IMG/VR virus record: IMGVR_UViG_3300035698_022190
Span: 124,001 to 188,000 of that record
Length of the DNA stretch: 64,000 nucleotides
Reading direction: 5' to 3' (one strand)
The notes under the pieces were generated by a model that was not told the origin of the DNA, searched no databases, and saw only the letters and a list, made by a program, of their open reading frames with translations. Positions 25,640 through 64,000 of the stretch are shown here, piece by piece. The stretch's first letter is position 1. The number at the start of each line of letters is the position of its first letter. A program made the position numbers and the translations under genes.

Positions 25640-25644
25640 ATTTG

Positions 25645-37575: not shown

Positions 37576-37697
37576 TTTTTGTCTCCTTTTATTTAGTTAG
37601 TAAATTAAGTTACTGTTCTTATACCTAATTTTTTTAAGATTTTGAAGTTGCCCTTTTGATTTTTTTACCTTATATTTAAACATAACCATAAAATTAT

Positions 37698-39050: not shown

Positions 39051-39087
39051 TAGTTGCTATTCTGGGTTTTTTTAGTTATATTTAAAC

Positions 39088-39696: not shown

Positions 39697-39734
39697 AATA
39701 AAAAAAGGGAACTAATACTTCCCTTTTTTCTTCT

Positions 39735-42531: not shown

Positions 42532-42656
42532 GTGTTTCCTTTTTTTTTAATTAGATTATCATACAATTCTTATACCTCAAAAACACCTTCAAAACTTAAG
42601 CTAAAAAAGTGCTTAAGTAAACTTAAGCTAAAAGAAGACCGAAGTCTTCTTTGTGT

Positions 42657-42941: not shown

Positions 42942-43069
42942 AGTATTCCTCTTTTAGTTAATTAAAAATTACTTACATATTACTTATACCAATTCTTAAC
43001 CTAAAAGAGCGCTTAAATAAATTTAAGCTAAAAGAAAGACCAAGGCCTTTCTTTTTTTAGTAAACCTGC

Positions 43070-43513
43070 TTACAGAATGCCAGTATCACTGAAGCTGTAG
43101 TAACCATTCTTACCGGCTATTATGATATGATCATGTAGCATAACATCAATTGCTCTGCAAGTAATTGCAATTCTTGTTGTAGCATTAATATCATCCTGAG
43201 AAGGTTCGGTTGAATTGCTTGGATGGTTGTGTCCAACTATTATAGCGGCTGCATCTAGTTCTAGAGCTCTCTTGGCTATTTCTCTTGATGAAATAACAAT
43301 AGAGGTTAAACTTCCTTTGAACATTACTTGACTAGTAATGATACGATTTTTAGCATCAAGAAAGATAACTGCAAATTGTTCTATATTTGTATCGCCGGAT
43401 AGCACAACTCTTAAGTGCTTAGATGTATCTCGAGATCCTACCAACTTATCGCCATGTAGCTTAAAAACTCTTTCTGGATTATCTTGAGGTAACGATTGAA
43501 TATGTTGTTGCAT
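43070..43513 (-). CDS. RadC-like JAB/MPN domain protein
   Basis: EQFAVIFLD, HNHPS...PSQDD and LHDHIII. Confidence 0.93.
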   Translation of the reverse strand: MQQHIQSLPQDNPERVFKLHGDKLVGSRDTSKHLRVVLSGDTNIEQFAVIFLDAKNRIITSQVMFKGSLTSIVISSREIAKRALELDAAAIIVGHNHPSNSTEPSQDDINATTRIAITCRAIDVMLHDHIIIAGKNGYYSFSDTGIL

Positions 43514-43994
43514 GTTAACTCCTTATTTAGTTATTCTTCTTATACCTAAAAACCTCCCCAAAAGCTTCTCAAAACCTATTAATTTTTAAGCTAAAAAGCT
43601 CTTATTAAAAAACTAGCAGGGTAGCTTATACTTCCTACCCTGCTCTCGGTTTGAATAAACATGAAAATTTTATTTTTAAAATGAGCAGGGCGGATATTGT
43701 GGTCTACCCTGCTCGGTAACTAGTAAAAAACATTTTTGTTTTTCTTAGCTTCGTTAGTTGTCCTAGTAGTGAATTAACTGTATGACAGTTCTAGCTAGCC
43801 CCCGTGTAAACAAAACTGTTTTTTCGTCGTTAAATTTTATCTGCGTCTTCCGCCACGTCCGTTGCCATGCCCGTCTTTACGATTTGGCTTGTCGTCGCCT
43901 TTTTTACCAGTGCGTGGATTATCTCCACAGTCGCCTTTTTTAGGCGTTTCTTTTTTGTCTGCCATGTTTATAGCGTCCTTTTTTTATTGATTGA

Positions 43995-44231
43995 TTACAG
44001 TCCTCTTTTTCTTTTTCTTTTCATTGTAGGCTGCTTGGTATGGTGATAGTTATTTTTTTCCCTTTCTGGGCTTCCCCATGGGACTGATGTTAAATGCCAC
44101 AATCCGCAGTGTTTGCAATGATAAAAAAACATTTTTATTCGTCTTTCACTCCTATGAGCGTTGTTGTGTTGAAAAAGAATGGTAGCCTGCTTAGCCTTTC
44201 CAGCTGAGTTGTATGGTATCTTATAGCACAT
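43995..44231 (-). CDS. YxCxxCxxWHLTS zinc-ribbon phage protein (paralog 2)
   Basis: FYHCKHCGLWHLTS motif. Confidence 0.75.
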   Translation of the reverse strand: MCYKIPYNSAGKAKQATILFQHNNAHRSERRIKMFFYHCKHCGLWHLTSVPWGSPEREKNNYHHTKQPTMKRKRKRGL

Positions 44232-44266
44232 TTTACTTCCTTTCTTTTAAAAAACGTTTTTGTTGT

Positions 44267-47200: not shown

Positions 47201-48412
47201 CTTGGATTGAATCTGTATCTGAACTCATTTCGCATGTTTCTGCAGTGAATACAAAGTAACACAGTGTTACAAGCAGTACTGCATATAATGGACGTACCCT
47301 CATTAATAGCCTCTTGTTTTTACTAAGAAATCTCTTAGTGTTTCATTGGAAATGTCTTCAGCGTTTACATCTGCAATTTGCATTTTGATTGTCGCTTCAA
47401 TGGCTTTCTTGCCATCATAATCAGTATCTTGCCATTCGCCATATAGCTTTCCTAGCAATTGTTGCTGACCATGAACATATGATTTTGTATTTTCGAAAAC
47501 TTCTCTACGGATGTTTTCTTTCTTTGGAGCATACCATTTAGTAAAACTTAGGTCCATGGCTCCTGAAATGAATAGTATAAGAAATAGGCCTACAATACAA
47601 AGTAGGACAATTACCGTGATTTTAAACGGGCTCATCTATTTTCCTTTTTAATTAAGTTTCTTTTTGCACCTTCACAGAAAGGATGGTCTTGATTGCCGTG
47701 ACACATTACCCGCCAGAAACTGTGCGGATAGTCTTCATCATCCTTCATGTCTATTAATTTACAATAACTTCCTGCACCATCTCGTAGATAGTGTGGACAG
47801 CTCTCTAAATTTAAAACTTTAGGCCGACGACCACCGGCCCTACTGTTTAAATTCCTGTGGTTTCCCATAGTTCTCCTACTTTATAGTTATTATATCTTTT
47901 TCTAATAATTCTTTCTGATACATCTTTACTCGATCATCCATCTTCCATTTGTCATATCTTCTGAGATAACTACTATTAAGCTGATTAGGCCCTATCTTTA
48001 TCTCGGAAGCCACTACCACCTCTATATAATTACCAGGAATCATATATCCTTTTGTATGGCCCCCACGATAGTCGACGGCCAGGATATAATATTCTAGATC
48101 TATGCGTCTTAAATTTATCCAATCCTCGGCATCCTGTACATTAGTAAATATATGCCAACCCATCGGGTATTCAAGTTTTGACAGAAGGACGTCTATAGTG
48201 CTTTTTTTGGAATTAGCATTGGTTCTAAAATCTTTTTCATGTAGCCACCGTTGTATAAAAAGGGGCTTATTTATATCATAGTAAATTTCTGGAAAAGGTC
48301 GACCATGACATGACCAAAAGACTTTAACACCAAAACCACTTATATTCATTCTGGTTTCAGTAATACTTTTTAAACTCATTTTATTTCCTATGAAATGCGG
48401 CGCCCACATCAT
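44267..48412 (-). CDS. Array of small accessory genes in promoter/terminator-bounded cassettes
   Basis: ORFs 44267-44458, 44459-44857, 44854-45057, 45609-45950, 45977-46651, 46797-47303, 47303-47635, 47632-47868 and 47876-48412. ATGA overlaps at 44854 and 47632. Confidence 0.65.
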
Positions 48413-48431
48413 TGACGTAAGCGCCTGTTAA

Positions 48432-48866
48432 TTAATTAGTTATGATTTTACCGCCACGTACTAGATCAAGAAAATCTACGCTCAAGGGCACTTCCCCGGG
48501 ATAGTCTTCCCAACGATCGGCCATTAAGGTAAGATGCTCTTCAGGAATATCGTGAACTCCTTGAAATTGTCCGGTACATTTCAAAACTTTAAGATTTGCA
48601 TCATACTTTTTAGCGAGATCAATATATGTCTGCATTTCCCAAATTCTTGTAAAGGTGTTTGACACTACTACGTCCATATTAAATCTCAGGGCGGTTTCAC
48701 AGGCCACGATGCAAGCTTCTGCAACGTCTTTAATCTGTGAAGGGTCGAATTCATAAACACCGTCTCTGATAAAAAACATGTCCATCTCTAAGTGTAAACA
48801 TTCAAAAGATTTAGCCATTGTAGTTTTTCCACTACCAGATAATCCCCTGATGAGTGATAACTTCAT
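48432..48866 (-). CDS. AAA_33/polynucleotide-kinase-like P-loop protein
   Basis: LIRGLSGSGKTT and VVVSNTFTRIWEM. Confidence 0.85.
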   Translation of the reverse strand: MKLSLIRGLSGSGKTTMAKSFECLHLEMDMFFIRDGVYEFDPSQIKDVAEACIVACETALRFNMDVVVSNTFTRIWEMQTYIDLAKKYDANLKVLKCTGQFQGVHDIPEEHLTLMADRWEDYPGEVPLSVDFLDLVRGGKIITN

Positions 48867-48999
48867 GCAACCTCCTATGCTACAAAAGGTCCAAGAAAAA
48901 GCTTAGCGGCTAATATTATCAATCCCACAATTGTTACTAGAATCATAATATCTATAAAACCACGCCACTTTGTTGATTTTGGTTGTCCCACATATCCTC

Positions 49000-50700
49000 C
49001 TATTTTCTAATCATTGCAAAATATACTTTTATTTCATGTTGAAATATTTCAATTTTTGTAACAACATGGCCTTTATTTTTTATGTTAGCTAAAGCTCCAA
49101 CATCTTCCCAGCTCAGTGCTTTGGAATAATCTCCATTAGTATTAAAGAGATTTGTCTTACAAATTACTTCACCAAGTTTGGCAGTTTTAGCAATTTCAAT
49201 TTCGTCCAGGCTCGTCCATTTTCCTTGAAAATATAGCCCAAATAGGCCACATAGAATGGCAACACCCATGCCCCACCAAAGTACTGCAGGAAGCGGAGTA
49301 AAAGAATTTTCTACATGTGTCCAAACATATAAGATTATTCCAGTTGCTATGGCCACCATCGTTCCAATAAAGATATATTCATATTTTTTATATTGCTTTA
49401 TAGTCATTTTTATTCCTTTTTTGTTATACCATTCTTATCCCAATTTTTAAGTTAAAAAAAAGGGAGCGAGGCCCCCTTTAATTTATTGTTCTTCTTTGGC
49501 TGCAGCTATTATTTCTTCCCTGTTTTCCCACATGATTGGTGCCCAGGTTAAAGTATATCTACAAAAAGTTCTTACAAATTTGTCGATACAGTTCCATCTT
49601 GTTTGTTCAATTCCACATTTTACCATTTCTCTGCGCACTATGGATCTCATGGATTTTTCGGATTGAAGCAACAATATCCAACCTAAGAGGACGTAAAGTA
49701 TTACTATTGATAACAATATGTGTATTATCATTTTAATTTCCTTTCTATTAAGTATTCTTCTTATACCCAATCTTAACGTAAAAGAGAGCATCACTGCTCT
49801 CTTTAATTTGTAAATATCTCACCAATATTTACAGAGTTCCCCATAATAACAAACAAAGACTATATATAACTATATAGCTTTACATAATTCTTATACCTAA
49901 TTGCGGTTAAAAGTGTCTAATGAAAATAAAAGAAATATACAATAATAAAACTCAGGAGGGCGCATACCAAACATGGTAGAAGATGGGTGTATATAAATTT
50001 ACGTCGGTCCCCAGTTCGGCGGCCGAAGTGTAAGTCAATGAACTTACATAAATAGTTCTTCATAATTTAATATACACTTTAAATAAAATAAAAGCAAGTT
50101 TAAACGTTCTTAAACTAAAAGAAGAGTTTAACCTCTTCCTTTAAGATACATCTTCTAAAGTACTGGTGCATTACAATCTGGGCAGTGTTTCTTTGTCAAG
50201 CCCAGTCCAGATAGCCCATTCAAAAACTTATGTGTTTTTTCATGTTTTACCGTAATGGGCTGCCATGCGGTCGTACATAGCGTGCAAAAGAAAGCGTTTG
50301 CTCCCCTGTTAGTTTTTCTTGTACTCGATTTATTTTGTAAAATAGCCTTTGATGTGTTTTTCATACTTATAAGAAATTGACAAATTGTATTATTTGTGTC
50401 TACATTTTGTGGAAAGTGTTTTGCTTGTAAAGCCATGTTATCTCCTGTTTGTTATTTATGGGCAATTTGCTGTCCCGGACTTAGTTTTAATTGGGAAAGC
50501 TTTTCTTGTAACTTAATAAATTCTACATCTGTGAGATGGATATCTATCTCTCGATCAGCGGTAAGAACTGATAAAACAATGGCCGATCCTGTTACTTTGC
50601 AAACTTCTCGGCTGGTATTAATCTTTATTTTGTCAGCACAAATCAGTTCTTCTTTTCTTGTAATGACAGCACTTGGGGATTTTTTCTTGGACATAGGCAT
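49000..50700 (-). CDS. Hypothetical proteins 49000-49407, 49483-49731, 50155-50436, 50452-50700
   Basis: Mostly preceded by a GG(T/G)ATAAG motif and followed by a hairpin. Confidence 0.6.
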
Positions 50701-50809
50701 GCTCCTTTTAGGTTAATTTAAATGACTAGTTATAATTCTTATACCATTTATATTTTAAGAAAAAATAAAGAAAAGTTGCTTTTAAAGGTATTGTATGCTA
50801 TATTTAGGT

Positions 50810-51001
50810 ATGAAACCATCAGAAAAAATTTATAACGATTTGATTCGAGAGTGGAATGCCTTTGAATTAGATTACGAAAAATACTTAGAATTTGGTAACC
50901 AAGCAGCAGCACGACGTGCACGACTCTCTTTAATCAGGCTGAGAAAATTGGTGACCCCTTTTCGTTTAATAAGTGTAGCTGAATCACAAAAAAAGGGTTA
51001 G
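50810..51001 (+). CDS. Hc1-like small basic (histone H1-like) protein
   Basis: GNQAAARRARLSL...KLVTPFRLISV resembles the GNKAAGTRARK family. Apparently leaderless ATG at 50810. Confidence 0.65.
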   Translation: MKPSEKIYNDLIREWNAFELDYEKYLEFGNQAAARRARLSLIRLRKLVTPFRLISVAESQKKG

Positions 51002-51002
51002 A

Positions 51003-51809
51003 ATGAATTCATCAAAATATAAGCTTACATTAAGAAAATCTTTATTAGATTACAGAGATTGGCGTGCTGAAACAATATATAGTGCCGGACCGCTTCCTAC
51101 TAAGTTTAGTTTAGAAAAGACCTTATCAAGAATAAAAGACCAAGGTAGTTTTGGGACCTGCGCAGCACAGACAGCTGCCTGCATAAAAGAAAGTCAGGAA
51201 TATATAGAAGATGGCTTACTTGAGGACTTTAGTCCTATGTTTGTTTATGCACACAGAACTCCAACCAGCATAGCCGGGATGTACCCTAGAGATGTAATGA
51301 AGATTATGCAAAACTTGGGGGGCGTTGCTGAACAAGATTACCCCTACAAAGCGGCTAATAGAAATAAACAAAATATCACCACCGCTATTTACGAAGACGC
51401 CAAAAATTATACTATTAAAAGTTATGCAAGCATATCAACAATCGATGCAGTAAAAAGAGCTTTAATAGCAGATGGCCCTGTCTTTGTAGGGCTCCCAGTA
51501 TTTAATTTTGGAAATACTTTCTGGAAGGCTAATTTTGGTGACGATTCTCTTGGAGGGCATGCGGTTGCTATAGTTGGGTATGATAAAAAAGGATTTACTT
51601 TACGCAACAGTTGGGGAACTTCTTGGGGCGATTATGGTTACGGATTCTTTCCTTATAAAGATTGGGGTGTACAATGGGAAGCATGGACAACAATTGATGA
51701 CAGCTCCTTTATTATAGATAATTATAAATATAAAGCCAGCCAATCAGAGAATACAAAAAACTTTGTTTTGTTAATTCTTGAATGGATCCTAAACATTTTT
51801 AAAAAGTAA
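51003..51809 (+). CDS. C1 (papain-like) cysteine peptidase
   Basis: QGSFGTCAAQ, GHAVAIVGYD and RNSWGTSWG. Confidence 0.93.
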   Translation: MNSSKYKLTLRKSLLDYRDWRAETIYSAGPLPTKFSLEKTLSRIKDQGSFGTCAAQTAACIKESQEYIEDGLLEDFSPMFVYAHRTPTSIAGMYPRDVMKIMQNLGGVAEQDYPYKAANRNKQNITTAIYEDAKNYTIKSYASISTIDAVKRALIADGPVFVGLPVFNFGNTFWKANFGDDSLGGHAVAIVGYDKKGFTLRNSWGTSWGDYGYGFFPYKDWGVQWEAWTTIDDSSFIIDNYKYKASQSENTKNFVLLILEWILNIFKK

Positions 51810-52379
51810 TGAAATTAAAAAATATTAAATTAAGATATTTCTTTCTTCCTTCAATAGCTTTTATCGTAGCACTTTGGTTTGTTCCTACCCAAGCACATAT
51901 GGCCGTGGGACCTGAAATAGAAGTTATGGAGATGCGCTCCTTATCTCCAGATGGAGAAGAACCACAAGTGGTTCATTTTGAAACAGAAGAATTTTCCTGG
52001 CAAAAATGGATTACTTGGATAGTAGCTACTGGTAATGGTTTATTGGGAACTGCTGTGCAAATAAAAAGAATTAAAGATAAAAAATAACCAACTAATATAG
52101 ATGAAACGTACTAGAGAAGAAGTATATGCATTAATAGACCAAGAAAGGGCATATCAAACAAAATGGGATTTGACCAATTATCCCGGCAGGGTAAAAGATG
52201 CCGATAAAGAGGTTGAATCTTGGCTATCCTCTATGAGAGTATATCTCAGAAAATCAGAAGAAGCTGCGCTTTCAGTTGACAAAACAGAAGCATTAGAAAA
52301 TATTAGAAAAGTTTTAGGTCTTGGGGTTGCTTGCTTAGAACATCACGGCGGACCATCACGAGAACAACCTGTCATATAG
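51809..52379 (+). CDS. Membrane protein (51809-52087) and hypothetical protein (52101-52379)
   Basis: Two hydrophobic segments in the first ORF. The second is helical, beginning TREEVYALIDQERAYQ. Confidence 0.65.
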
Positions 52380-52484
52380 ACAGACCAAACTTTTGAGTAA
52401 TAAAAAACTGTGCCAAAATGACAATTCCTGGATTCTGGCACAGTTTTTGTACTATAATAAGCAACTAATTACATAAACAATAAT

Positions 52485-52841
52485 ATGGAGATACAAAAAA
52501 TGTACTACTTTTCAGAACTATTCGAAAACCGCGGTTTTGATTATGATTGGGAAAGCCGAACTAGTATGTCGGTAGAGACCCTTGATGATCATTTCGAAGC
52601 ATATATAGCATTACCAGGGATAAAGAAAAAAGATATCAAGGCAACAGTAGATAATAATCTTTTGACCATTGAAACAGAGCAAAATGAAAAATATAAAATT
52701 AATACAGCTTACAAAAAAACATGGCGCCTTGGCGATAGTATTGATACGAGTAAAATTGATTTAAAACTTGATGCGGGAATTCTTATAATCACATTACCAA
52801 AGAAGGAAGAATCCAAGTCTATTACATTAACTGTTAAATAG
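52485..52841 (+). CDS. Hsp20/alpha-crystallin small heat-shock protein
   Basis: ALPGIKKKDI and IDLKLDAGILIITLPK. Confidence 0.9.
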   Translation: MEIQKMYYFSELFENRGFDYDWESRTSMSVETLDDHFEAYIALPGIKKKDIKATVDNNLLTIETEQNEKYKINTAYKKTWRLGDSIDTSKIDLKLDAGILIITLPKKEESKSITLTVK

Positions 52842-52942
52842 CCGTCAGTTTTTTTTAATTTAAAAACAGGGAATGTTGGTTCCCTGTTTTTTTATGCCCG
52901 AAACCACTTGACTTTCTGCAAGTAAAAACGTTATATTTAGAT

Positions 52943-53152
52943 ATGACTAAAGCACAGAAAATATTTTTTAAGTATGCCCAAACAGCACCTTTAAAAACCA
53001 TAATTAAGGCAACTACAAAAGTTGTACAAAAAGGTGTAGGGACTGTTCCCCCAAAAGGAATTAAGAGTGTTGGTTTTAAAGGAAAACACTTGCCCAATAA
53101 AAATGCTTTTGAAGGGGCAGATAAAATTGGAAAAGGCGCTCCACGCCCCTAA
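52943..53152 (+). CDS. Small basic protein, first gene of the recoded block
   Basis: Apparently leaderless start 5 nt after TATATT, with the sequence FFKYAQ. Confidence 0.65.
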   Translation: MTKAQKIFFKYAQTAPLKTIIKATTKVVQKGVGTVPPKGIKSVGFKGKHLPNKNAFEGADKIGKGAPRP

Positions 53153-53154: not shown

Positions 53155-54510
53155 ATGTCGTCTAAAGCCAAAGGCATTCCCGATAGATCTAAGTATCTAC
53201 AAATGCCGGTTACTAAGAATAATGAGTGGCTTGGCAATATTCAGTCCCACAAGGCAAACAAGGCAGGGCAACATTTTGATTTACGTATAAATGATCCAAA
53301 AACTTCGCATGCATATTCTTGAGCACTTCGTAGTTTACCAGAACCTGGACAAAAGGTATTAGCCGTTGAACAGCCCACTCATACAAAATCTTATATGGGG
53401 TGGTCTGGTATAATAGAATCCGGCTACGGGGCAGGGACAGTAGAAAGTACTTTTCATGATAAAATAGAAGTGCTAGAATCTGGCACAGATAGAGTCACCT
53501 TTAATATGTATGGACCGGGACAAAAAGTACATCGTTATATGCTTATGCGGATGGATAACAAAGATTGGCTACTTTATAACTATACTGCTACAACAGACAC
53601 ACCATTAATACCAAAACATAAACGTTCTTATAAAGAAATATCATATGATAAAGTTGAAACTAATAGAGATAATGAGTGGATGGCGCCCAAGATGGACGGT
53701 GCCCACAATACAGTTCTTCTTAGACCTGAAAAACGCATTGACGTATATTCTCATAGGCTAAGTAAAAAAGGCTCAGAAAGAATTGATCATTCATATAGAA
53801 CAGATTTATATAAAACGAAAAGTCCTAAGGAATTAGGAGTAACGGTAGTTCGTTCTGAATTATATTTACCAAAACAAGATAGTTCTATAGTAGGAAGTTT
53901 GTTGACTCCTACTGTTTGGAAATCAAGACTAAAGCAAAGAACTCTTGGTAAATTACAAAATGTTATTTTTGATGTGGATCGTTATAAAGGACAAGACATG
54001 ACTGACGCGCCATACAGTGAAAAATGGCGAATATTGCAAAAAATTAATAAACTTATTCCTGCGCTACATTTACCCGAACTGGCTAAAACTCCAGAGCAAA
54101 AAAAAGCTATGTTAAGATCGGTTCGTGATAATACCCATTCAGAAACAGGCGAAGGTATTGTTATTTATAAACTTAACAAATCTATTCCTATCAAAGCAAA
54201 AGCTGTAAGTGACTACGATGTAAAAATAACCGGAACTTATCCAGCACTTCCTGGATCAAAATATGATGGAAAAGCTGTTGGAGGTTTCACGGCTACCCCA
54301 GAGTATGACAGCAATGTTGAGATTAGAGTGGGTACTGGCTTAAAAGATGTAGAACGAATGGAAGTTTATAAGCATCCTGAAAAATATATAGGCCAATGGG
54401 CTAAAGTCCAGGGACTAAAAAAAACGAAATCGGGCAAGATTAGAATGCCCGTATATAAAGGACTTCGTTTTGAAAAATATCTTGGCAAATTTTTTAACCA
54501 AAAAACATAA
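53155..54510 (+). CDS. LigD-type 3'-phosphoesterase domain fused to an ATP-dependent ligase (451 aa; TGA at 53320 read as Trp)
   Basis: Reads HKANKAGQHFDLRI...AYS[TGA]ALR...LAVEQPTH...GYGAGTV, matching the LigD PE pattern HxDLRL...SWA...LAV...GYGAG. The ligase part has APKMDG, EGIVIY and RMPVY. Confidence 0.88.
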
Positions 54511-54962
54511 TGGAAAACATAGCAAACTACTTTTATTCTGAAATGCTTGCAAATATGATATCACAAGCACGATATACTGTTAAAAGCTTAAAAAAACAGA
54601 ACTATTTATATTCCCCATCTTCGGCGGCGTGGGAGTATCAAACTATTCACTTTGGAGGGATGCGCGGATCTGGCCATAACACAGCTATGGAAGCCTTGTC
54701 CCATGTTTTTAAATGTGAAATTGTTTGCGCAATCGCCGCACATACCAAGCTTTTTCCTGAGGCAAAAAAAGGTACGTCAATTACTTGGCTTGACCATGTG
54801 CTACAGCCGGGAACTCATAGACATAAATTTGAAGTAGTGTTTCTAGATAACTGGGCCACCATGATGTTACAGGCATACCCAGATGTGGAAAGCATGATTC
54901 ACCAACTAGAGCCCATATATAGAGCATACACAAATAGCACTATTTTTGTATTAATACACTAG
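54510..54962 (+). CDS. Hypothetical protein
   Basis: TAATG overlap with the ligase gene. Ends in TAG. Confidence 0.6.
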   Translation: MENIANYFYSEMLANMISQARYTVKSLKKQNYLYSPSSAAWEYQTIHFGGMRGSGHNTAMEALSHVFKCEIVCAIAAHTKLFPEAKKGTSITWLDHVLQPGTHRHKFEVVFLDNWATMMLQAYPDVESMIHQLEPIYRAYTNSTIFVLIH

Positions 54963-54981
54963 AGGATGAAATAAAAAATAT

Positions 54982-57144
54982 ATGAGTTTTAATTTAAATA
55001 AAGTTGAGTATAAAGACCATTTAAAAGGGTTTTGAGCGGGCAATTTAATAGCTAATTGGAAAGCGTTGCCGAGCGAGTTCAAGAAATTTGAGCCACCATT
55101 TTTTACCACAAAGGATGATATACTGTTTCCCTATAACTGGCAAGTGAACTGGAAAGCTGACGACGACAATGATATTGAGTATATGTATTTACACTTAATG
55201 AATAAACATAAAACATTGCAGCTGTCAGCAAATCAAATTCGAGATGGATGATTAGAACATATAAACGATGATTATTTGTGGGTTGCCAATCAGCGTGCTT
55301 ATGATTTAATGAAAACAGGCATGGTTCCCCCAAGCACAGGAATGGCGTGTAATAATGAGTTTTCTGACAAGATTGATGCCCAAATAGAGTGTGAAATCTT
55401 TGGTGTATTTTATCCCGATGAGCCACACAAGGCATTAAATATAGCAGATTTGCCAATTAGAACAGTTGGCGAAGGTATTGCTTATCACGCCTCAAGAGTT
55501 TATGTGGCGATGTATTCTTTAGCTTTAAACAGTCAATCGCCATTAGAGTTGTTAGATAAAGCAATCCAATATGGGAATGATAAAACAAGTGAGATTTATA
55601 ATTCAATAAGAGTAAGTTTCAAAAATAGTTATACTTGGGAAGAAGCGAGAGATTTCTTTTATGAAGAATATCAAAAGAACAACTCTGACTACGATTGGGC
55701 GTTAGATGCTGAGATTAATTTTGGTGCTGTTCTAATTGCTCTGTTATGGGGTGAAATGGATTACAAAAAGACTGTGATGATTGGTACTCTTGCAGGATGG
55801 GATTCAGATTGTAATGCAGTTACAGCAGGGTCATTGGTTGGATATGTAAAAGGATTCAAACATCTTGAACAGGTTTTTGGTAGAAAGATTTATACTAATT
55901 ATAATATAGCAAGAACTCGTAAGAATATGCCTGATTATTTACCTAATGTAAGTGGCGCTGAAGATACTTTTGAGTTCATGGCAGATAGAATGATTAATTT
56001 TATGACAATAGATAATGGAGATAAAATGAAAAAAGTAATATTTTGTATTGGAGACAGTAGAACTGCTGCAGGACACAGTCCTTGGTACACACCAGCTCCC
56101 GATAGTTATCCTTTTTTCTTACAGCAAGAAATGGGGAATGGGTATGATGTTAGACAGTGGGGACAAGGTGGCACTTCTGTAACTAAGGGAGTCCATTGGA
56201 GTATCTGGGATGGTTTTGAAGGTAACCCGGCTTTGTCTTTTCAGCATTTAAAAAATGTTCAGCAAATAGAGAGTTTCTGGGATAAAGCTTTTCCTGGAAT
56301 GCCTTTTAATGAAACTGAGATAATTAACATCGTCAATTATGGTACTAATGATGCGATGAATAATAGATGGCCTACAACTAAAGCGAACTTTAAAAGGGAT
56401 TACAAAGCATTAACTTGGCTACTAAAAGGTAAAACATACCTTTGTTTACCACAGCCAACTTTTGGTACAGGTGAAGACCATGTTTATAACTCGTCAATTT
56501 TAGAAGTGCACGCATTAATAAATGAGCTTTCCAAAGAAACAGGATGCCCCACAATAGACTTTTATACAGGTACAACAGCTAGTATGTCGCCTGTTGATGG
56601 GCTACATTTCGGAGCATTAGGCAATATGCACTTTGCTAATGCAGCAAGTAAAGAATTAAAAAATGACTCACCAATAATACCACCAATAATCGGAGAACCT
56701 ATGGAAACACCAATAATTAAAATTGAAAATAATAAACTATCCGTAACTAATTTTGATCCAACTGTTACAAATTATAGCTGGCAGTATAGTAAAACATTGC
56801 ATGGTTATGATGAATGGCTTGGTTTTGGAACAGAAATGGACATTAAGCCGAGATTCCAAATAGATGGACATTATTTCTTTTGTTACGCAAGAGATAATAC
56901 CACTGATGGTAGAACACCTGATTCTAAGAGGGTGATATATAAATCAGGCGCCCCGGCCCCAATATGCGGATGCACAGATTCGGAAGCAACAAATTATAAT
57001 CCAAACGCCACAGAAGATGACGGCACATGCATATACTCTAACCCCACCAATAATGATAAAGTTGTTTTAGAGATGCGAGCACATCTTTTAACTGCTACAA
57101 ATGCATTAACTGCCATTGAAGACTTATTTGATGATATTGAGTAA
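54982..57144 (+). CDS. ADP-ribosylglycohydrolase-like domain + SGNH/GDSL hydrolase + C-terminal GCTD-NYNP repeat motif (720 aa; TGA at 55033 and 55249 read as Trp)
   Basis: LKGF[TGA]AGNLIANW, DDDNDIEY, IRDG[TGA]LEH, IDAQIECEIFG and GWDSDCN (ARH family). IGDSRTA, GQGG, NYGTND and DGLHF (SGNH). CGCTDSEATNYNPNATEDDGTC. Confidence 0.85.
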
Positions 57145-57157
57145 AATTTAAGGAGAC

Positions 57158-57433
57158 ATGATGAAAAAAATAGCTAATAGATTTGTGCCCTCAAGAGATT
57201 TCGTTAAGCTTTGAAACAGGCGTAGTCGTATTGCAGCACAGCTCACAAAACAGGTAGCTGAAATAGCAACTAAACGAGTAGCACCTGGACCAGAGCCATT
57301 GGGAAAATTTATGAAAGCAATAAAAGTTCCAAGCCAACGAATCACAAAAGTTGATCAAGATATTTCTAAAGTCCAGTCAATAATAAATAAAAAAAGATAT
57401 TCAAAATTATACAAACAGTATCATGGAGCTTAA
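57158..57433 (+). CDS. Basic hypothetical protein (91 aa; TGA at 57212 read through)
   Basis: AAGGAG RBS and an open frame to TAA except for one TGA. Its end overlaps the next gene. Confidence 0.7.
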
Positions 57434-57794
57434 ATTAAAATATATTTTCACTACCGAGACAGATCGTCAAGAGGGGCTTATGCAGAAGGCCCCTCTTGCA
57501 CAGAACGAAGGTGCTTTATTTATCTGGCAAAAGCCCGTTGTAAATTATGTTTGGAATAAGAACGTATCCTTTCCAATAGATGTCGGATTTTTTTCTGAAT
57601 CACACTCTCTTATTAATATAGAGCATTTAAGAGCTTATCAAGAAAGTCCAGTATATTCAGTTGGGCGCTATCAATTTATCTTAGAAACCCCTCATAGTTG
57701 GTTTATTAAACACAAAATAAAAGTGTTTACCAACTTAATTAAACTTTTAGACCCTATACCCAAAGAATTATCTTGACAAACTGCTAAAAATTAA
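57423..57794 (+). CDS. DUF192 family protein
   Basis: RQEGLM, GALFIW, WNKNVSFPIDVGF and ILETPHSWF. Ends at TGA 57776, or at TAA 57794 if read through. Confidence 0.85.
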
Positions 57795-57806
57795 CTATCT
57801 TAAAGT

Positions 57807-58304
57807 ATGTTAAATCCTGCGACTGATAAGACACAACCTTCCGAATATACGAAGGCCCTCAAACTAAAAAATAAACTTGATATTGCTATACGCAATAAAG
57901 AGCTCCAAAACATTTCTCATAATGTTCGAGCAATGGTTGATGGAAAAGAAAGTAACAAATCTTTTGCTAAGAGTGTTAGCAAACATACCGCCACAGGTGC
58001 TGTAGTAGGCGCTGCCGCTGGTGGGGTTGCCTCTGTTCCCCTATCTTTAATATCAAAAGGTTTTAGAGGTTTAAGACATAAGCCCATTGGCATGGCTACA
58101 GTGGCTGCCTCAACTGCAATCGGTGCAGTTGCGCTTGGCGGAAATCGCCTTAGACAGGGAAAACGTCCAATTCAAATTAGACAACACGACGCAGATTTAA
58201 TGCATTTAAAAGGCTTAAGACAAGAATTAAAAAACACAGAATCACCTGCTTATACAGCATATGTTAAACATAACAGAAAGTTGAGCAGGACTGTGGATGT
58301 TTAA
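57807..58304 (+). CDS. Basic protein with Gly/Ala-rich hydrophobic segments (putative internal virion protein)
   Basis: ATGAVVGAAAGGVASV and MATVAASTAIGAVALGG. Confidence 0.65.
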   Translation: MLNPATDKTQPSEYTKALKLKNKLDIAIRNKELQNISHNVRAMVDGKESNKSFAKSVSKHTATGAVVGAAAGGVASVPLSLISKGFRGLRHKPIGMATVAASTAIGAVALGGNRLRQGKRPIQIRQHDADLMHLKGLRQELKNTESPAYTAYVKHNRKLSRTVDV

Positions 58305-58764
58305 AGTCAATGCTGTTTCACATAAAAATTTTTCAGAAATACAAAAAGAAGTTTTAGATCAAACGATTGTTAAGCTCGAAACGGTATTTAATAGTCAAAA
58401 ATTTAAAGAACAAGTAGTAAACTTTAAATGTCCTTTAACAGGAAAGGAAGAATTTCTTGAAAATTTAGGACATTCAAATGAACAGTTGTATGACAAGTTG
58501 ATGAGCGGAGCCACACTCCACGTAGAAATTGATACCGACCTACCCAGTCGCAGGGTTATCGGATATACATATCCCAAAGGGGTTACAATTTATACATATA
58601 AGTGGTGGTTTGATAAATATGCAAAAAAATATTATGCTGCTCATTTAGCGCATGAATGGTGCCATAAACTAAACTTTGACCATACAGCACGTCGTAAGAA
58701 ACGGTGGAAGTATACTGTACCATATATGATAGGAAATATAGTAGAAGAGTTAACTAATGAGTAA
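58297..58764 (+). CDS. Zincin-like metallopeptidase domain protein
   Basis: HExxH motif in AAHLAHEWCHKLNFDH, preceded by VIGYTYP. Confidence 0.7.
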   Translation: MFKVNAVSHKNFSEIQKEVLDQTIVKLETVFNSQKFKEQVVNFKCPLTGKEEFLENLGHSNEQLYDKLMSGATLHVEIDTDLPSRRVIGYTYPKGVTIYTYKWWFDKYAKKYYAAHLAHEWCHKLNFDHTARRKKRWKYTVPYMIGNIVEELTNE

Positions 58765-61408
58765 AGCCAAAGATATTTGATCTAAGACTAAAAAACAAGT
58801 TGGACAGAAAGTCGAACAGATTGAGAAAAAAGATATAGCTATTGGTACTGGTGTAGGACTTGGCGCTGGGACAATAGCCCAGAAAATAGACAAACCTAAA
58901 CGTTTGTTTGCCGGTGGAGTCCATCAAGGTAAAAAATTAGTCTACTATAATCCTTTTGTAGCAAAGTATCCTTTTAAAATACAAGGTAAGTTCAAAGAGA
59001 CAAAGCGAAAAATTAATCGAGCAGCTACATTTATTTCCAGAAAAAAGGCTCAGATTAGACACCCCGCAATTCCCGTTTACACAGATTCCCAAAAAATACC
59101 AAAAGGCTCGGTCGCTTATAATTACTCTGAATTAGACCTTAAGGGCGGGGGCCCAAATAGGGCTCCTGTGCATAAAAGTGTATCTGTAATTAATAATATA
59201 AAAGATTCTTCTACCTTTACTGATAAGTATAATTTACAATCTAGTAAGGCTTTTTATTCACGGGGTATTTCAACAAAAACAGAAATGTTTGATGACTATG
59301 TATCACGCAAAGTAGGGAAACCCATAAAAGATATTAGCCAGCTAGAGGCTCAAAAAGTCTTTGAAAGTGCCTCTCACAAATTTGTAAAACCACGAGTCGG
59401 AACCATGAGCCAAGGAACTTATACTTCTGGTGAGAAACTTTTAACTGAATTTGATGAGACCATCGGAAAGGGTACTAACAAAAAATCAGGTAAACCAGCT
59501 TTCTTAAAGGTTTGAAATAATAAAAAGAATTTTATTGTACAAGACAAATTAGATTTTGCTGGCAAAAAAGAATATCGTATCCATGTGGGACCAGAAGGTG
59601 TAGAGCAGACCGGTTTTAAACGTTTTGGAAGAAGAAACCCTGTAAATGCCTTTAAACATGTGGATCAAGAATTTTTAGGAAATCTTGGGGCTGCTCATAA
59701 AGAATTTCTGAAAACTAAGGGTGAGTCAAAGAACATGGTTATTGGTTATGACGTCGCGCAGACCAAAAAAGGATGGAAGGTGGTCGAAGGTAATATTATG
59801 TCAGACTTTAAAGCAGGCGGACACTGAAGAGCAAAAAATTTAAAATTTAGACATGCTGTAACAGGAAAAGGTCTTACAGGTAAAGCTATAGGTGTAGGAG
59901 CTTTAGCAGCTGTAGGCGTAACAGCATACTCTGCATTAAAGAAAGAGGCTGCAAAGAAACGGAAAGTTTCCGGAGAAACAAAAGCCACGGCATTAATGGC
60001 AGGCGGAGCAACCACTGCTGGAACATATATTCATCTTCGTAAGCCTGATTATCACACATCAAGAAACATAGCCGCACTTCAAAGAGAATCAAAAGGTAAA
60101 GTTACTTCTTTACATTATAATACTTCAAGTAAATTCCATCAATTAGCTAATAAGGCTGTATTTGGTGGATCTATGAAACATCTTGATTCTCATAAGCTGT
60201 GGTCCCAAAGAAAAGGACCTTGAAAAAAAGGAAAGAAAAAACAAATTGAAGGTACATTATATCTTAGATCACAGAAGGGGACTGCAACAAAATGAGTACC
60301 AGATGTGGGAATTAATTTAGATCCGGGACAGCACGCAAAAAAGGGCGGCAAAGGATCAGCCTGAGGTCGTTTAATAAAAAAAGAAACATTATCTGATACC
60401 CCTGCATTGAAAGGTCTGGCAGTTGAGAATTGAGATGCTGATAGGTTTCTTGAATCGAGAGGTACTACTCGAAAAGAATTTTTGTCAAAAACAAACGATG
60501 AGTGGGAACCGCTATTTAAAAAGTGGCATAAAGAAAAGCCAGTATTTGTTAAACAAGACAGTTCCAATATGAAGGGAGTATATGGTGATTTAGATAAAAT
60601 TAGACGACACCAAATGAAAGACATTGGGGGAAAGAAAGTATATACCCCAATCAAAACTGACAATTATGATATTCTTAGAAAGCAATTAACTAACCCACCT
60701 AAGGCAGTAAAAGGGGCTGTTAATAGAGGCACTTTCTTTTTTGGCGCAAAGATTCCAAAGGAAATGAAAGAATATCGTGTTCACACTCTTAATGGAAAGT
60801 TTTTAAATGCTTCTCCTCGTTGGGGTGACAAAGCTCTAACAAAATGAGAAACCAATCCAGCTAAAATTAATGAAAAATCCATTCGACAGCTTGAAGCTGG
60901 TGTAACAAAGCTCCAATATGAAGAGCTCCCCAAAGAACTAAAAAAGCATAGACAGCATAAAAGATTTAAAACCTCGCCTGCTCGAATTCGTCACAAATAT
61001 TTAGGGATGGACGTTTTTATAGACCCATCTGGAAAGCATGCTCCAAAAATAGTAGAAATTAATTCTAGTCCTATGACTGCTGGTATGCCTATGACTAATT
61101 TAAGGAAGGATCAGGTAGAAGATATATTACAACAAAATAAAAGAATTAAAGGGCCTTTACCTGATACTAAAAGCAAAGCTTATAAAAAAATTGTGCGAAA
61201 GCCAAAAAACTTCTTACTTTTAACGAAATCTCGTTTAGGTAAAATGAAAGCACAGCATAGTGAAGCAAAAGCTTTTTATACTTCTTTGACTGGAAGAAAA
61301 GAATTTAGAAATGTAGCGGTAGCCAAAGCTGGCGTAGCTGGTTTAGCAACAATTGGATTAACAGGAGCGGCAATTCATGGCCTCAAAAAAAGAAAAAAGA
61401 ACAGATAA
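58757..61408 (+). CDS. 883-aa protein with two ATP-grasp modules and Gly/Ala hydrophobic segments (8 in-frame TGA read as Trp)
   Basis: Five listed ORFs share one frame, separated only by TGA (58778, 59513, 59825, 60221, 60293, 60362, 60431, 60845). Module 1: FVKPRVG, FIVQDKL, KEYRIHV, IGYDV, VVEGN. Module 2: VFVKQ, KEYRVH, LGMDV, IVEINSSP. Confidence 0.85.
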
Positions 61409-62567
61409 TTTAATTTCTGCAGCAGGCGGCACGGGTGTGGGGACAGCTGCATACTTAGGTAGCAGGTCTATTGACATCTCAAATCACTCAGATGCGACAC
61501 AGCAGCGTTTAATTTCTGCTCATAAAAAACGTGGTACAGGCATTGGTTTTAGAAATAAGCCTAGAGCCCTGCTAGCTAAAGTTATATATGAGCCTAAATT
61601 TAAGTATTATACTTTAAAGTCACAGGTACGGAAAAACCCACCAGGGGTAATGTTTAGTAAATTACTTACTAAAACTGAGGGCGGTATTACTATTAATGGC
61701 CCTAAGTTATTTAAATCTTATCGCAAAACTTTAAGTAATAAAAAGAATTACCAAAACCTTCCGCATATTGGAAAATATTTTCCGAAAACAATGGAAATGA
61801 CGGATGCCTTTGCAGAAGTTGGTATTTCAAATGTATCTAAAACCACCGATAAACAGCTTTTAAAAGGCGTAGCTGATATTGAAAAGAAACACGGTAAGTT
61901 CTTTTATAAACAAAAACCAGACTTTGATAGAAATCTAGGGCACTCAATGCGTGGAGCATACGGCCATAGTGAGGATATACCTAAGGGTGTAAAACGTACA
62001 GATATTACTCTTTGAGACCGCGTACGAAATAAAGATGTAAGATATAAAAAAGCTCCTGACATATTAAAAACAATTAGAAAAGAAGCCCCTAATGTACTAA
62101 TCAGCAATGATTGGGGAACAGGACACAAAGAATACCGTTTAGAAATTTTGGGAGATAAGCCCACACTTCTACACCGTTTTGGTCGTAAAAAAGGAATGAA
62201 GGTTAAGATAGACAAAGAATTAAGTGAGTCTGGAAGAGCCGGGTTAAACACATTTATTGGTGACTATAAAAAATATTTAACCAACAAAGGGGCATACAAG
62301 CATCTAGATGAAGTTCCTTTTGTTGGCGCAGATATAATTATTCCTAAGAAAGGAAGGGTAAAAGGAGTAGAGTTACAATGGAATTCAGGTTTCCCCTTCC
62401 ATGCTAAGGCAATGAAACATATGGTATCTAAACCCTATGGATCAACCGGACGCATGGCCGAATATATAACGGGACGTATTTCACATCCAAAGGCATTAGC
62501 TATAGGAGGTACTGCAGCCTTAGCAGTTGGCGGCGGAATCAAAGCGTGGAGAAGACGTAACGATTAA
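61377..62567 (+). CDS. 396-aa ATP-grasp protein with terminal hydrophobic segments (TGA at 62013 read as Trp)
   Basis: FPKTMEM, KFFYKQK, KEYRLEI, VGADII and GVELQWNSG. GGAG RBS. Confidence 0.8.
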
Positions 62568-63454
62568 TGAAAACTTTAGTTAAATTAGGTTTTGAGGCTG
62601 CTAAACCACGTACGCGTCTTAGACGTGTCACGGATGTAGGCACAGCGGCCTTTGCTGGGGCCTTAACGTCACTTGTACCCGGAGTCCCTATAGGAACCGG
62701 TATAGTAGCTGGGATAGCTCCTAAGGGCCATAAAACAGAAGTGGCGGCTAAAACAACAGCTGGAGGTATACTTGCCTCAGCACCCGCAGCAATGTATGGT
62801 GTGCATAGGTTAGCTAAAGATGTCAGTAATACTAATAAAGCTGATTATATGCGCTTAATAGATCGCGGACAAGAATTATATAAAGATGTAAAGACCGGGA
62901 AAGCAGGTAAGTGAAAAACGTTAAAGTATATGATGCGTCGAAGTAAAGGGGCAACTAAGAAAATGTATGCAGCCAACATTGCCTTAGGAACAATAGGAAC
63001 TGGGCTATCATATGCTGCAGCAACAAAAAATTATTATAAAAAAGCAGAACTAACTAAGCTTGGTTTCCATCCTGAGTCTTTTACGCAACCATCTCATGAA
63101 AAAGATCAGGCCTTTCTAAATTCTTTTTCGCGTGCGGGGATTAGTGGCAAAACAAGAAAAACTTTAAATAATCCACTGACTTGGGCTTTAGGTGGTATAA
63201 GTTTATTTATGAATCATAAAAAACGTTCAGATAATCCAGAGTCAATGTGGCCTTATTTAACTGGTGGTTTGTTAGCAGCAATATCAATAAAAAGATGAAG
63301 CAACGCAAGCAAAAGAGAAAAACAAAAATTTGTAAAAGAATATAATGCTACAATGGGCACCACTTTTACTTTAAAGCATCCTAAGATGCAATCACTTTGG
63401 AATATGACAAATGCCCATGCAAATAGGGTAGACAGGTTTAAAGGTAATGGCTAA
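62567..63454 (+). CDS. 295-aa basic protein with several Gly/Ala hydrophobic segments (TGA at 62912 and 63296 read through)
   Basis: ORFs 62567-62914 and 62930-63298 share a frame, which stays open to TAA 63452-63454 and overlaps the next ATG. Confidence 0.75.
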
Positions 63455-64000
63455 ATTTTTTAAAAAAGCTGAGTATGATCCAACTAAAGTACGTCAGGCC
63501 CCTGGCTATGATGCCGGAGCTCAATATAAACATAATAGAAACACGCCTACATCACATGCTATTAGACAATTAGGGGCAGAGTGAATTTATAGAAAACCCC
63601 CAAAAGGAGTTTTTAAAGAAAGTAAAATTCCTGTAAATCAGGGATCCCATTTAAAAACAGCCGGGGTATGGGGAAAATTTACTAATGCCTTGTCAGAAGG
63701 TTTTAAAGAAAGCGACGCTGAATTAAAACAAAGTATGAATCATGGTTGAGAGACTTTAAAAGCTCATGGTAGGTATGGTAAGCATTTGAGTAAACATAAA
63801 TTTTATGTTTATAAAACGGGTCGAGAGTATGGAACGCCTCGTATTCCTTTATTAAAGCACGACATGTCAAAATTTTTACCAAGTGAATGAGTTCCCTATA
63901 CTAATTTTTGAGAAGGCCCTGAGGGAGTTAAAGGTACATCAAAATCTAGAACATTAAAAACTAGATATGGTCTAGCAGCTCCAGCAGTTTACGATCGTTT
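63447..64000 (+). CDS. Partial basic protein running off the window (TGA at 63582, 63747, 63888, 63909)
   Basis: MAKFFKKAEYD... No TAA or TAG in 184 codons. Confidence 0.75.

What the first reader, a model, noticed from the sequence alone, without database searches (positions are those of the whole stretch)
53155..64000. Split genetic code: TGA read as Trp in a plus-strand gene block, but used as stop on the minus strand
Seen in the sequence: 20 in-frame TGA codons in eight plus-strand frames, with no interrupting TAA or TAG (53320; 55033, 55249; 57212; 57774; 58778, 59513, 59825, 60221, 60293, 60362, 60431, 60845; 62013; 62912, 63296; 63582, 63747, 63888, 63909). Reading through them restores gene-to-gene overlaps and full domains. 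Three TGAs sit where I recall a conserved Trp: the LigD phosphoesterase S-W-A, and G-F-W and D-G-W in the ADP-ribosylglycohydrolase domain. That points to Trp rather than Gly (code 25) or Sec. TGG is used alongside TGA in the same genes. At least nine minus-strand genes end in TGA within ATGA overlaps (1714, 1983, 5248, 7708, 16110, 19229, 23569, 44854, 47632), and long minus-strand genes contain no internal TGA. Every other plus-strand gene I checked ends in TAA or TAG. Established: stop-codon recoding biased to late genes is known in gut phages (crAss-like, Lak). Inference: this phage infects a standard-code host and switches code during infection so that this block is translated only late. 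The 57774 TGA lies inside a -35 box and is ambiguous.
Basis: partly seen in the sequence, partly recalled or inferred. Interest (0 to 1): 0.95.

Follow-up and report, generated by a model that had tools for sequence, protein, structure and literature searches.

The report
Jumbo phage reads TGA as tryptophan
A 210-kb salt-lake phage writes tryptophan as the stop codon TGA in its late, virion-building genes, while its early genes still use TGA as a stop; this kind of split code is already known from gut phages, so this is a new example of a known kind.

Summary
All 20 listed in-frame TGAs are present, in eight plus-strand frames that have no TAA or TAG. Independent assemblies from four sequencing runs show no differences at the 12 TGAs in the stretch laid.

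TGA means Trp:
- Sites 53320, 55033 and 55249 align to Trp in 54/55, 58/58 and 60/60 homologues.
- Against a TGA-free 228-kb relative, 10 of 13 aligned TGAs match TGG.
- Two recoded relatives swap TGA and TGG with the window in both directions.

Early minus-strand genes have no internal TGA, against about 280 TGG. About 20% of them end in TGA, nearly all in ATGA overlaps.

The split follows gene modules, not strands. Two plus-strand blocks in the window (30730-41464 and 50795-53152) have no TGA at all. The recoded set also includes the large terminase, an intein-bearing protein and a giant RNA polymerase elsewhere on the contig.

This matches the known pattern of stop-codon-recoded phages (Borges et al.). 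No UCA-anticodon tRNA, release factor or TrpRS turned up in the 134 kb I could read, which includes a 28-tRNA array. The other 76 kb were out of reach. The verdict is a new member of a known kind, of moderate interest.

The parts
53155..54510 (+). LigD-like gene (3'-phosphoesterase plus ATP-dependent ligase domains), 451 codons, with a sense TGA at 53320 in the motif HAYS-W-AL.
   Evidence: Pfam LigD_N, DNA_ligase_A_M and OB_2 match the pieces weakly. PDB 3p4h aligns from just after the TGA. The TGA column is Trp in 54 of 55 homologues. Relatives L034, L030 and L031 have TGG there.
54982..57144 (+). ADP-ribosylglycohydrolase plus GDSL-hydrolase gene, 720 codons, with sense TGAs at 55033 and 55249.
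   Evidence: The Pfam ADP_ribosyl_GH match starts at profile position 90 in the piece after the second TGA. The TGA columns are Trp in 58/58 and 60/60 homologues. L034 has TGG at both.
57158..57433 (+). Small 91-codon ORF with a TGA at 57212. Neither the gene nor the TGA is verified.
   Evidence: The frame is open. No Pfam match and no counterpart in L030.
57423..57794 (+). DUF192 gene. The TGA at 57774 is either its stop (117 aa) or a Trp followed by 5 more codons.
   Evidence: Pfam DUF192, E 3e-16. The L030 orthologue ends at a length that matches a stop at the TGA, and carries two in-frame TGAs of its own opposite window TGG. The site stays ambiguous.
58757..61408 (+). One 883-codon gene of unknown function with an ATP-grasp/TTL-like C-terminus and 8 sense TGAs (58778, 59513, 59825, 60221, 60293, 60362, 60431, 60845).
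   Evidence: It aligns along its length with the 831-aa protein P0176 and with the L030 orthologue. TGA is shared with L030 and/or L034 at 59825, 60293 and 60845. The other sites face Leu, Phe, His or Tyr. A window TGG (SPRW) faces TGA in L030 and Trp in P0176.
61377..62567 (+). 396-codon gene of unknown function with a sense TGA at 62013.
   Evidence: The frame is open. L034 has TGA and L030 has ATC at that site.
62567..63454 (+). 295-codon gene with sense TGAs at 62912 and 63296.
   Evidence: At 63296, L034 and L030 have TGA and the TGA-free relative L031 has TGG. Site 62912 faces Asn or Ala.
63447..64000 (+). DUF5662-like gene that runs on to window-equivalent position 64256. Sense TGAs at 63582, 63747, 63888 and 63909, plus one at 64107 outside the window.
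   Evidence: Sites 63582, 63888, 63909 and 64107 face TGA or TGG in relatives; L031 has TGG-Trp at 63888, 63909 and 64107. Site 63747 faces Gln, Glu or Arg.
54510..54962 (+). A TGA-free gene inside the recoded block. Genes 57807-58304 and 58297-58764 are also TGA-free.
30730..41464 (+). Plus-strand block with no TGA at all: 37 TGG, no sense TGA, and every stop TAA or TAG. It includes a spike-tip protein at 32909-33322.
   Evidence: Pfam CIS_spike_tip, E 6e-19.
50795..53152 (+). First genes of the plus-strand late block (papain-like peptidase, HSP20 and others). They are TGA-free, with 16 TGG.
1..30186 (-). Early minus-strand block (RtcB, two ligases, nucleotidyltransferase, many small ORFs). 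No internal TGA. Thirteen genes end in TGA, all in ATGA overlaps with the next start codon.
41606..50700 (-). Second early minus-strand block. Three genes end in TGA (41606, 44854, 47632) and there is no internal TGA. The orthologue of 48432-48866 (stop TAA) in L030 ends in TGA at the same length.

Best explanation
The window is positions 124,001-188,000 of a 210-kb jumbo-phage contig (IMGVR_UViG_3300035698_022190) from a salt-lake or marine community. The phage is a TGA-to-Trp (code 4 type) stop-codon-recoded phage of the partial kind.

In its late modules about a quarter of Trp codons are written TGA (45 TGA against 140 TGG). Those modules hold the large terminase, an intein-bearing 967-aa protein, a fused RNA polymerase beta/beta'-like giant protein, and the LigD-like, ADP-ribosylglycohydrolase and ATP-grasp genes of this window. 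The early modules, which are minus-strand and carry the tRNA array, contain no sense TGA and still end about 20% of their genes with TGA.

Shown: the TGAs are real, they stand for Trp, they are confined to certain modules, and they exchange freely with TGG among relatives.

Inferred from the published model for such phages: the host uses the standard code. Early genes are translated normally. A phage-induced change then lets ribosomes read UGA as Trp, so that the recoded genes give full-length protein only late. The most likely agent is a tRNA with anticodon UCA encoded in the 76 kb of the contig that I could not read, or beyond the contig's ends. With 8 TGAs in single genes, decoding must be efficient at each site.
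For: - **Frames:** open frames run across 20 TGAs. The chance for the largest frame is about 4e-28.
- **Reads:** four independent run assemblies show no differences at the TGAs.
- **Trp in homologues:** Trp stands opposite the TGA in 54/55, 58/58 and 60/60 homologues.
- **TGA-free relative:** 10 of 13 aligned TGAs face TGG in L031.
- **Recoded relatives:** TGAs in L030 and L034 face window TGG in 17 of 24 cases, and TGA is shared at 8 window sites.
- **Gene E:** it aligns end to end with an 831-aa protein.
- **Early genes:** no real internal TGA against about 280 TGG. 28 TGA stops, 24 in ATGA overlaps, with read-through tails of 0-41 codons.
- **Domain ends:** the NAPRTase and isochorismatase domains end 4 residues before their TGA.
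- **Stop exchange:** TAA and TGA swap at an orthologous early-gene stop.
- **Late functions:** terminase, major-head-like protein, intein host protein, RNAP-like giant.
- **Published model:** Borges et al., bioRxiv 10.1101/2021.08.26.457843. That study detected a TGA suppressor tRNA in only 35% of code-4 phages.
Against: - No tRNA with anticodon UCA in contig 76,199-210,208, even with relaxed ARAGORN thresholds and an Rfam scan of the tRNA region.
- No ORF of 180 aa or more with a GGQ motif and no TrpRS.
- Expression timing was not measured, and the host is unknown.
- Some structural genes (spike tip, major-head-like protein) carry no TGA, so TGA does not mark the whole late gene set.
- The recoded block also holds enzymes (LigD-like, ADP-ribosylglycohydrolase) whose expression time is unknown.
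Confidence: 0.8

Rival explanations
1. UGA is decoded without a dedicated UCA tRNA. The phage's own tRNA-Trp(CCA), made in large amounts from the 28-tRNA array, reads UGA by third-position mispairing. It may be helped by its U11-A24 D-stem pair, which is the state of the E. coli Hirsh suppressor as I recall it, and by a phage factor that weakens host RF2.
For: The phage has a tRNA-Trp(CCA) at L026:14304-14375 with U11-A24 by my reading of the sequence. No UCA tRNA was found in 134 kb, including the whole tRNA array. Only 35% of code-4 phages have a detectable suppressor.
Against: 76 kb of the contig are unread, and the contig may not be the whole genome. A U11-A24 pair is common in tRNAs and is not diagnostic. 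Near-cognate reading is normally far too weak for genes with 8 TGAs. The bases after sense TGAs are mostly G or A, which is not the leaky TGA-C context.
Confidence: 0.12
2. The whole phage, and its host, use code 4 uniformly. The minus-strand ATGA 'stops' would then also be read as Trp, giving slightly longer proteins.
For: Read-through tails after early TGA stops are short (0-41 codons, about 8 in the middle) and would do little harm.
Against: - Early genes have about 280 TGG and no real internal TGA, against 24% TGA in late genes.
- 24 of 28 early TGA stops sit exactly on the next gene's ATG.
- An early-gene orthologue swaps TAA for TGA at the same position.
- TGA is the minority Trp codon even in late genes, although the genome is 37% G+C.
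- From general knowledge, no free-living code-4 lineage is known from such waters.
Confidence: 0.04
3. TGA stands for something other than Trp: Gly (code 25), selenocysteine, or Cys or Arg by read-through.
For: About half of the 20 sites fall at variable positions where relatives have Leu, Phe, Ile, Asn, Glu and so on.
Against: Wherever the column is conserved it is Trp. TGA and TGG are the dominant exchange in both directions. No site faces Gly or Cys consistently.
Confidence: 0.02
4. The genes are broken (pseudogenes), or the TGAs are assembly errors.
For: None beyond the stops themselves.
Against: The sequence is identical in contigs of four runs. There are no frameshifts and no TAA or TAG in 10.8 kb of frames. 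TGA is conserved at the same codon in relatives of 42-70% identity.
Confidence: 0.01

Closest known systems
TGA-recoded (code 4) phages with recoding biased to structural and lysis genes: the Agate and Jade clades of Borges et al. (bioRxiv 10.1101/2021.08.26.457843; later Nature Microbiology 2022, from memory)
   Same: In-frame TGA aligns to Trp. Recoding is concentrated in late and structural genes, while early and replication genes fit the standard code. Close relatives with the standard code exist. Genome size is in the 150-200+ kb range. TGA is depleted as a free-standing stop.
   Different: - The habitat is a salt lake or sea, not a gut.
- Early genes keep many TGA stops, but only inside ATGA overlaps.
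- Two plus-strand blocks, one with a structural gene, avoid TGA completely.
- No TGA suppressor tRNA, RF1 or TrpRS was found in the 64% of the contig that was read.
- The overall gain in coding density is only about 4 points, below the 10% threshold used in some surveys (PMC13037316).
TAG-to-Gln (code 15) recoded crAss-like and Lak phages (validated by metaproteomics, PMC9523058)
   Same: The logic is the same: a stop codon is used as a sense codon in late genes of a phage that infects a standard-code host.
   Different: The codon, the amino acid and the phage lineages all differ. Reading TAG as sense does not improve this window.
Uniform code 4 (Mollicutes and some insect endosymbionts) and code 25 (Absconditabacteria and Gracilibacteria, with their phages)
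   Same: TGA is a sense codon.
   Different: In those systems TGA is sense in all genes and never a stop. Here it is absent from early genes and ends about 20% of them. In code 25 it means Gly; here it aligns to Trp.

Membership tests
Stop-codon-recoded phage, TGA to Trp, partial or late-biased (Borges et al. type) | In-frame TGA inside conserved protein-coding genes, real in the DNA | tested here: met
   20 sites in the window and 45 in the late blocks. Four run assemblies agree.
Stop-codon-recoded phage, TGA to Trp, partial or late-biased (Borges et al. type) | TGA aligns with Trp in homologues | tested here: met
   Trp in 54/55, 58/58 and 60/60 homologues. 10 of 13 sites face TGG in the TGA-free relative.
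Stop-codon-recoded phage, TGA to Trp, partial or late-biased (Borges et al. type) | Recoded codons concentrated in late, structural or packaging genes, with early genes compatible with the standard code | tested here: met
   Terminase, intein host protein and RNAP-like giant are recoded. Early blocks have no internal TGA against about 280 TGG. Exception: the spike-tip block and the major-head-like gene are TGA-free.
Stop-codon-recoded phage, TGA to Trp, partial or late-biased (Borges et al. type) | Phage-encoded suppressor tRNA with anticodon UCA | tested here: inconclusive
   None in contig 76,199-210,208, which holds 28 tRNAs and a tmRNA. The feature is present in only 35% of published code-4 phages.
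Stop-codon-recoded phage, TGA to Trp, partial or late-biased (Borges et al. type) | Accessory code-change genes (RF1, TrpRS); optional in the family | tested here: inconclusive
   No ORF of 180 aa or more with GGQ. The one ORF with KMSKS has no aaRS domain. Larger ORFs scanned by Pfam gave none. 36% of the contig is unread.
Stop-codon-recoded phage, TGA to Trp, partial or late-biased (Borges et al. type) | Host uses the standard code | not testable with these tools
   No host link was found. The only hints are indirect: TGA stops in early genes, and a related 204-kb contig binned with a Bacteroidales MAG.
Stop-codon-recoded phage, TGA to Trp, partial or late-biased (Borges et al. type) | Temporal switch: recoded genes translated only late | not testable with these tools
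   Needs time-resolved transcript, ribosome or protein data from an infected host.
Uniform code 4 genome | TGA used as a sense codon throughout and never as a stop | tested here: not met
   No internal TGA in early genes. 28 early genes end in TGA, 24 on the next ATG. TAA and TGA swap at an orthologous stop.
Code 25 (TGA = Gly) | TGA aligns with Gly | tested here: not met
   One Gly in 55 at 53320 and none at the other conserved sites.
Selenocysteine insertion | TGA opposite Cys or Sec in homologues, with a tRNA-Sec gene | tested here: not met
   Trp stands opposite the TGAs. No tRNA-Sec passes threshold. SECIS elements were not searched.

The most novel reading that the evidence does not exclude
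This phage may truly lack a UCA suppressor tRNA and reach efficient UGA-to-Trp decoding by another route. One candidate is its own tRNA-Trp(CCA), which has a U11-A24 D-stem, acting as a Hirsh-type suppressor. Another is a phage factor that disables host RF2. Either would be a new way for a virus to switch the genetic code in mid-infection.
Probability: 0.1. Interest if true: 0.8.

Novelty: new member of a known kind. Interest (0 to 1): 0.4.

Why it matters
- **Annotation.** Gene calling with the standard code breaks the packaging, RNA polymerase and several enzyme genes of this phage into fragments. The overall gain in coding density from reading TGA as sense is only about 4 points. Surveys that ask for a 10% gain would miss partial recoders like this one, so recoding outside guts may be undercounted.
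- **Evolution.** The clade offers a natural series: one TGA-free relative and at least two recoded relatives whose TGA positions differ. This could show how sense TGAs spread gene by gene.
- **Mechanism.** The phage carries a near-complete tRNA set, a tmRNA and RNA-repair enzymes, but no visible UGA decoder in two thirds of its contig. Completing the genome would show whether the decoder is an ordinary suppressor tRNA or something else.

Tried and rejected
- Megablast of 53000-64000 against GenBank phages found no match.
- A terminase tblastn found only distant jumbo phages (Salmonella phage Arash, Vibrio phages).
- Pfam on the separate pieces of the recoded genes gave mostly sub-threshold hits. 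Full-length homologues were needed instead.
- Exact-protein look-up of the RtcB gene failed. This contig's proteins are not in that collection, so the contig had to be walked with the capped viral scans.
Contig 1-76,198 stayed out of reach. The first metagenome scan found nothing, and the second found only a 65% relative.
- ARAGORN at 70% thresholds gave four 'tca' calls among 372, one of them antisense inside the tRNA array. I treat them as noise.
- The 27-bit tRNA-like element at L027:9000-9075 has a 13-14-nt 'anticodon' loop and a poor acceptor stem. An alternative long-range helix fits a YrlA-like fold. I rejected it as a suppressor.
- The 319-aa ORF with KMSKS, just past the window end, is not an aaRS by Pfam.
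- The giant RNAP-like gene gave only 1 of 3 TGAs opposite Trp in its orthologue. This is uninformative, not contradictory.
- Early TGA-ending genes of the window had no Pfam families, so domain-end evidence came from the neighbouring NAPRTase, NUDIX and isochorismatase genes.
- The bases around sense TGAs show no leaky-context signal.
Full report
**Where the window comes from.** A protein of the window retrieved its own source, IMGVR_UViG_3300035698_022190, a 210,208-bp viral contig. Window position x equals contig position x + 124,000. Public runs that hold the sequence are labelled salt lake metagenome and marine metagenome. Using proteins at the edges of what I held, I walked the contig in both directions and assembled positions 76,199-210,208, which is 134 kb.

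**The observation.** On the + strand between 53125 and 64000, eight frames are free of TAA and TAG but contain the 20 listed TGAs. The longest frame, 58757-61408, has 883 codons and 8 TGAs. Its two other frames carry 53 and 69 TAA/TAG, so such an open run has a chance of about 4e-28. Reading TGA as sense raises coding density in 53155-64000 from 0.89 to 1.00. Reading TAG as sense does nothing.

Contigs assembled independently from four runs were laid on 55000-60999. No differences are listed at any of the 12 TGAs in that stretch. The pieces shown cross 10 of them with no differences at all. One run carries a slightly different strain that keeps the TGAs at 57774, 58778 and 59513. The TGAs are therefore real.

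**What TGA stands for.** The pieces of each gene were searched separately, and the homologues were then aligned to a read-through translation inside scripts.
- In the ADP-ribosylglycohydrolase gene, 55033 and 55249 fall in columns that are Trp in 58/58 and 60/60 homologues.
- In the LigD-like gene, 53320 falls in the S-W-A motif of the phosphoesterase domain. The column is Trp in 54/55 homologues.
- Three relatives were fetched. L031 is a 228-kb JGI contig with no in-frame TGA. L030 and L034 are closer relatives that do carry in-frame TGAs.
- Against L031, 10 of 13 aligned TGAs of this phage face TGG. These include three in the large terminase.
- Against L030 and L034, TGA is shared at 59825, 60293, 60845, 62013, 63296, 63582, 63888 and 63909. 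The relatives' own TGAs face window TGG in 17 of 24 cases.
Five fall at variable positions (Leu, Phe/His, Asn/Ala, Gln/Glu/Arg). Four could not be aligned (57212, 57774, 58778, 60362).
- The 883-codon frame aligns along its length with an 831-aa protein, so it is one gene.

Gly, Cys and Sec are not supported at any conserved site.

**TGA in the other genes.** In the early, minus-strand blocks every apparent internal TGA in a code-4 ORF call turned out to be an antisense artefact or an upstream extension. That leaves about 280 TGG and no sense TGA.

In those blocks, 28 ORFs end in TGA. Twenty-four of these stops sit in an ATGA that is the next gene's start codon. Reading through would add only 0-41 codons. 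In the neighbouring NAD-salvage cluster, the NAPRTase and isochorismatase domains end four residues before their TGA. The orthologue of window gene 48432-48866 (stop TAA) in L030 ends in TGA at the same length. TGA is therefore a working stop there, but it is almost confined to overlaps, where the ATG dictates it.

**The split is by module, not by strand.** Plus-strand genes 30730-41464 and 50795-53152 contain 53 TGG, no sense TGA and no TGA stop. With the late-block TGA share of 24%, the chance of that is about 5e-7 (my arithmetic). The first of these blocks encodes a contractile-injection spike-tip protein, so not all structural genes are recoded.

Recoding continues past the window to the contig end. 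The large terminase has 8 TGAs, five of them in an insert of about 360 aa. A 967-aa protein with a Hint-LAGLIDADG intein has 3. Recoding reappears in a + strand block at contig 83-93 kb, where a 2019-aa fused RNA polymerase beta/beta'-like gene has 3 TGAs; its orthologue in another phage has none. Over both recoded blocks there are 45 sense TGAs and 140 TGG.

**The decoder.** The minus-strand early region holds an array of at least 28 tRNAs at contig 98,145-107,601. It includes tRNA-Trp(CCA). A tmRNA lies nearby, and its tag frame ends in TAG. No tRNA has anticodon UCA, even at relaxed thresholds. No ORF of 180 aa or more has a GGQ motif, and no TrpRS was found.

This does not exclude membership in the known class. 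Borges et al. detected a TGA suppressor tRNA in only 35% of code-4 phages, and a third of this contig is unread. A less likely reading is that the phage's tRNA-Trp(CCA) itself reads UGA. Its D-stem has U11-A24, the state of the E. coli Hirsh suppressor as I recall it, but that pair is common, so I give it little weight. The base after sense TGAs is G or A in 36 of 45 cases, which is not the leaky C context.

**Comparison with what is known.** The pattern matches the published picture of stop-codon-recoded phages: sense TGA equals Trp, it is concentrated in late genes, early genes are standard-compatible, standard-code relatives are close by, and free-standing TGA stops are depleted.

The differences are of degree:
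- The habitat is non-gut. A 2026 survey found alternative codes in only 0-0.65% of jumbo phages outside guts (PMC13037316).
- The overall coding-density gain is only about 4 points.
- Two plus-strand blocks are entirely TGA-free.
- No decoder is visible so far.

I therefore file it as a new member of a known kind. The temporal switch and the standard-code host remain inferences.

Noticed in passing
L026:8960-18416 (contig 98,145-107,601): An array of at least 28 tRNA genes on the early strand. ARAGORN finds 25, and Glu(UUC), Asp(GUC) and a second Tyr(GUA) come from Rfam or relaxed ARAGORN. It includes tRNA-Trp(CCA) at L026:14304-14375. No stop-codon anticodon is present.
   Followed up: yes
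L027:10268-10672 (contig 95,539-95,943): A phage-encoded tmRNA (Rfam 108 bits) with tag peptide GKNIPVNLLAQGQVGHSNFAYAG. The tag frame ends in TAG, so it stays a stop under TGA suppression.
   Followed up: partly
L027:9000-9132: A tRNA-like element (27 bits, below threshold) with a perfect T-arm, a 13-14-nt loop in place of the anticodon loop, and a possible long-range helix like the Y-RNA-like YrlA (E 0.33). The same genome encodes RtcB at window 533-1717.
   Followed up: partly
L028:7208-13267 (contig 83,406-89,465): A 2019-aa single gene matching RNA polymerase beta and beta' PHROGs. It may be a virion RNA polymerase. It has 3 in-frame TGAs, and its 58%-identical orthologue in L029 has none.
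   Followed up: partly
L002:17014-19914 and L002:12758-15427: The 967-aa late protein carries a Hint plus LAGLIDADG intein. The large terminase is about 360 aa longer than that of relative L031, and the insert holds five of its eight TGAs.
   Followed up: partly
L028:1421-2356: A reverse transcriptase (RVT_1) gene on the minus strand. It sits near a MoxR-type AAA ATPase and a DUF559 endonuclease-like gene.
   Followed up: no
L023:2794-2869: A second phage contig from the same metagenome (3300035698_005070) carries a tRNA with anticodon CTA. A TAG-recoding phage may live in the same water.
   Followed up: no
window 26751, 29643, 29717, 30698, 37604, 42555, 43525, 45517, 49748: The motif TTCTTATACC (GGTATAAGAA on the minus strand) recurs at repeat copies across 26.7-49.8 kb. 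It may be a phage promoter for minus-strand genes.
   Followed up: no
L004:16628-18995: An NAD-salvage cluster (NAPRTase, NUDIX hydrolase, isochorismatase/nicotinamidase-like) joined by ATGA overlaps.
   Followed up: partly
window 533-1717, 11130-12485, 15047-15898, 53155-54510: A heavy load of nucleic-acid repair genes: RtcB ligase, an ATP-dependent DNA ligase, a nucleotidyltransferase and a LigD-like phosphoesterase-ligase.
   Followed up: no
L003:19400-19614 (contig end): The contig ends inside a + strand gene made of GGAACATC(A/C)GG-type repeats encoding Gly/Thr/Ser. The assembly probably broke there, so the genome is likely larger than 210 kb.
   Followed up: no
L038 (DAOQAF010000001.1, 204,271 bp): A contig binned in a Bacteroidales MAG encodes a LigD-like protein 53% identical to the window's. 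It is probably a related jumbo phage. This is a weak hint at a Bacteroidota host.
   Followed up: no
window 4174-4283: Five overlapping copies of a 32-nt repeat, spaced mostly 15 nt apart (one gap of 33), inside a minus-strand ORF (3892-4329).
   Followed up: no
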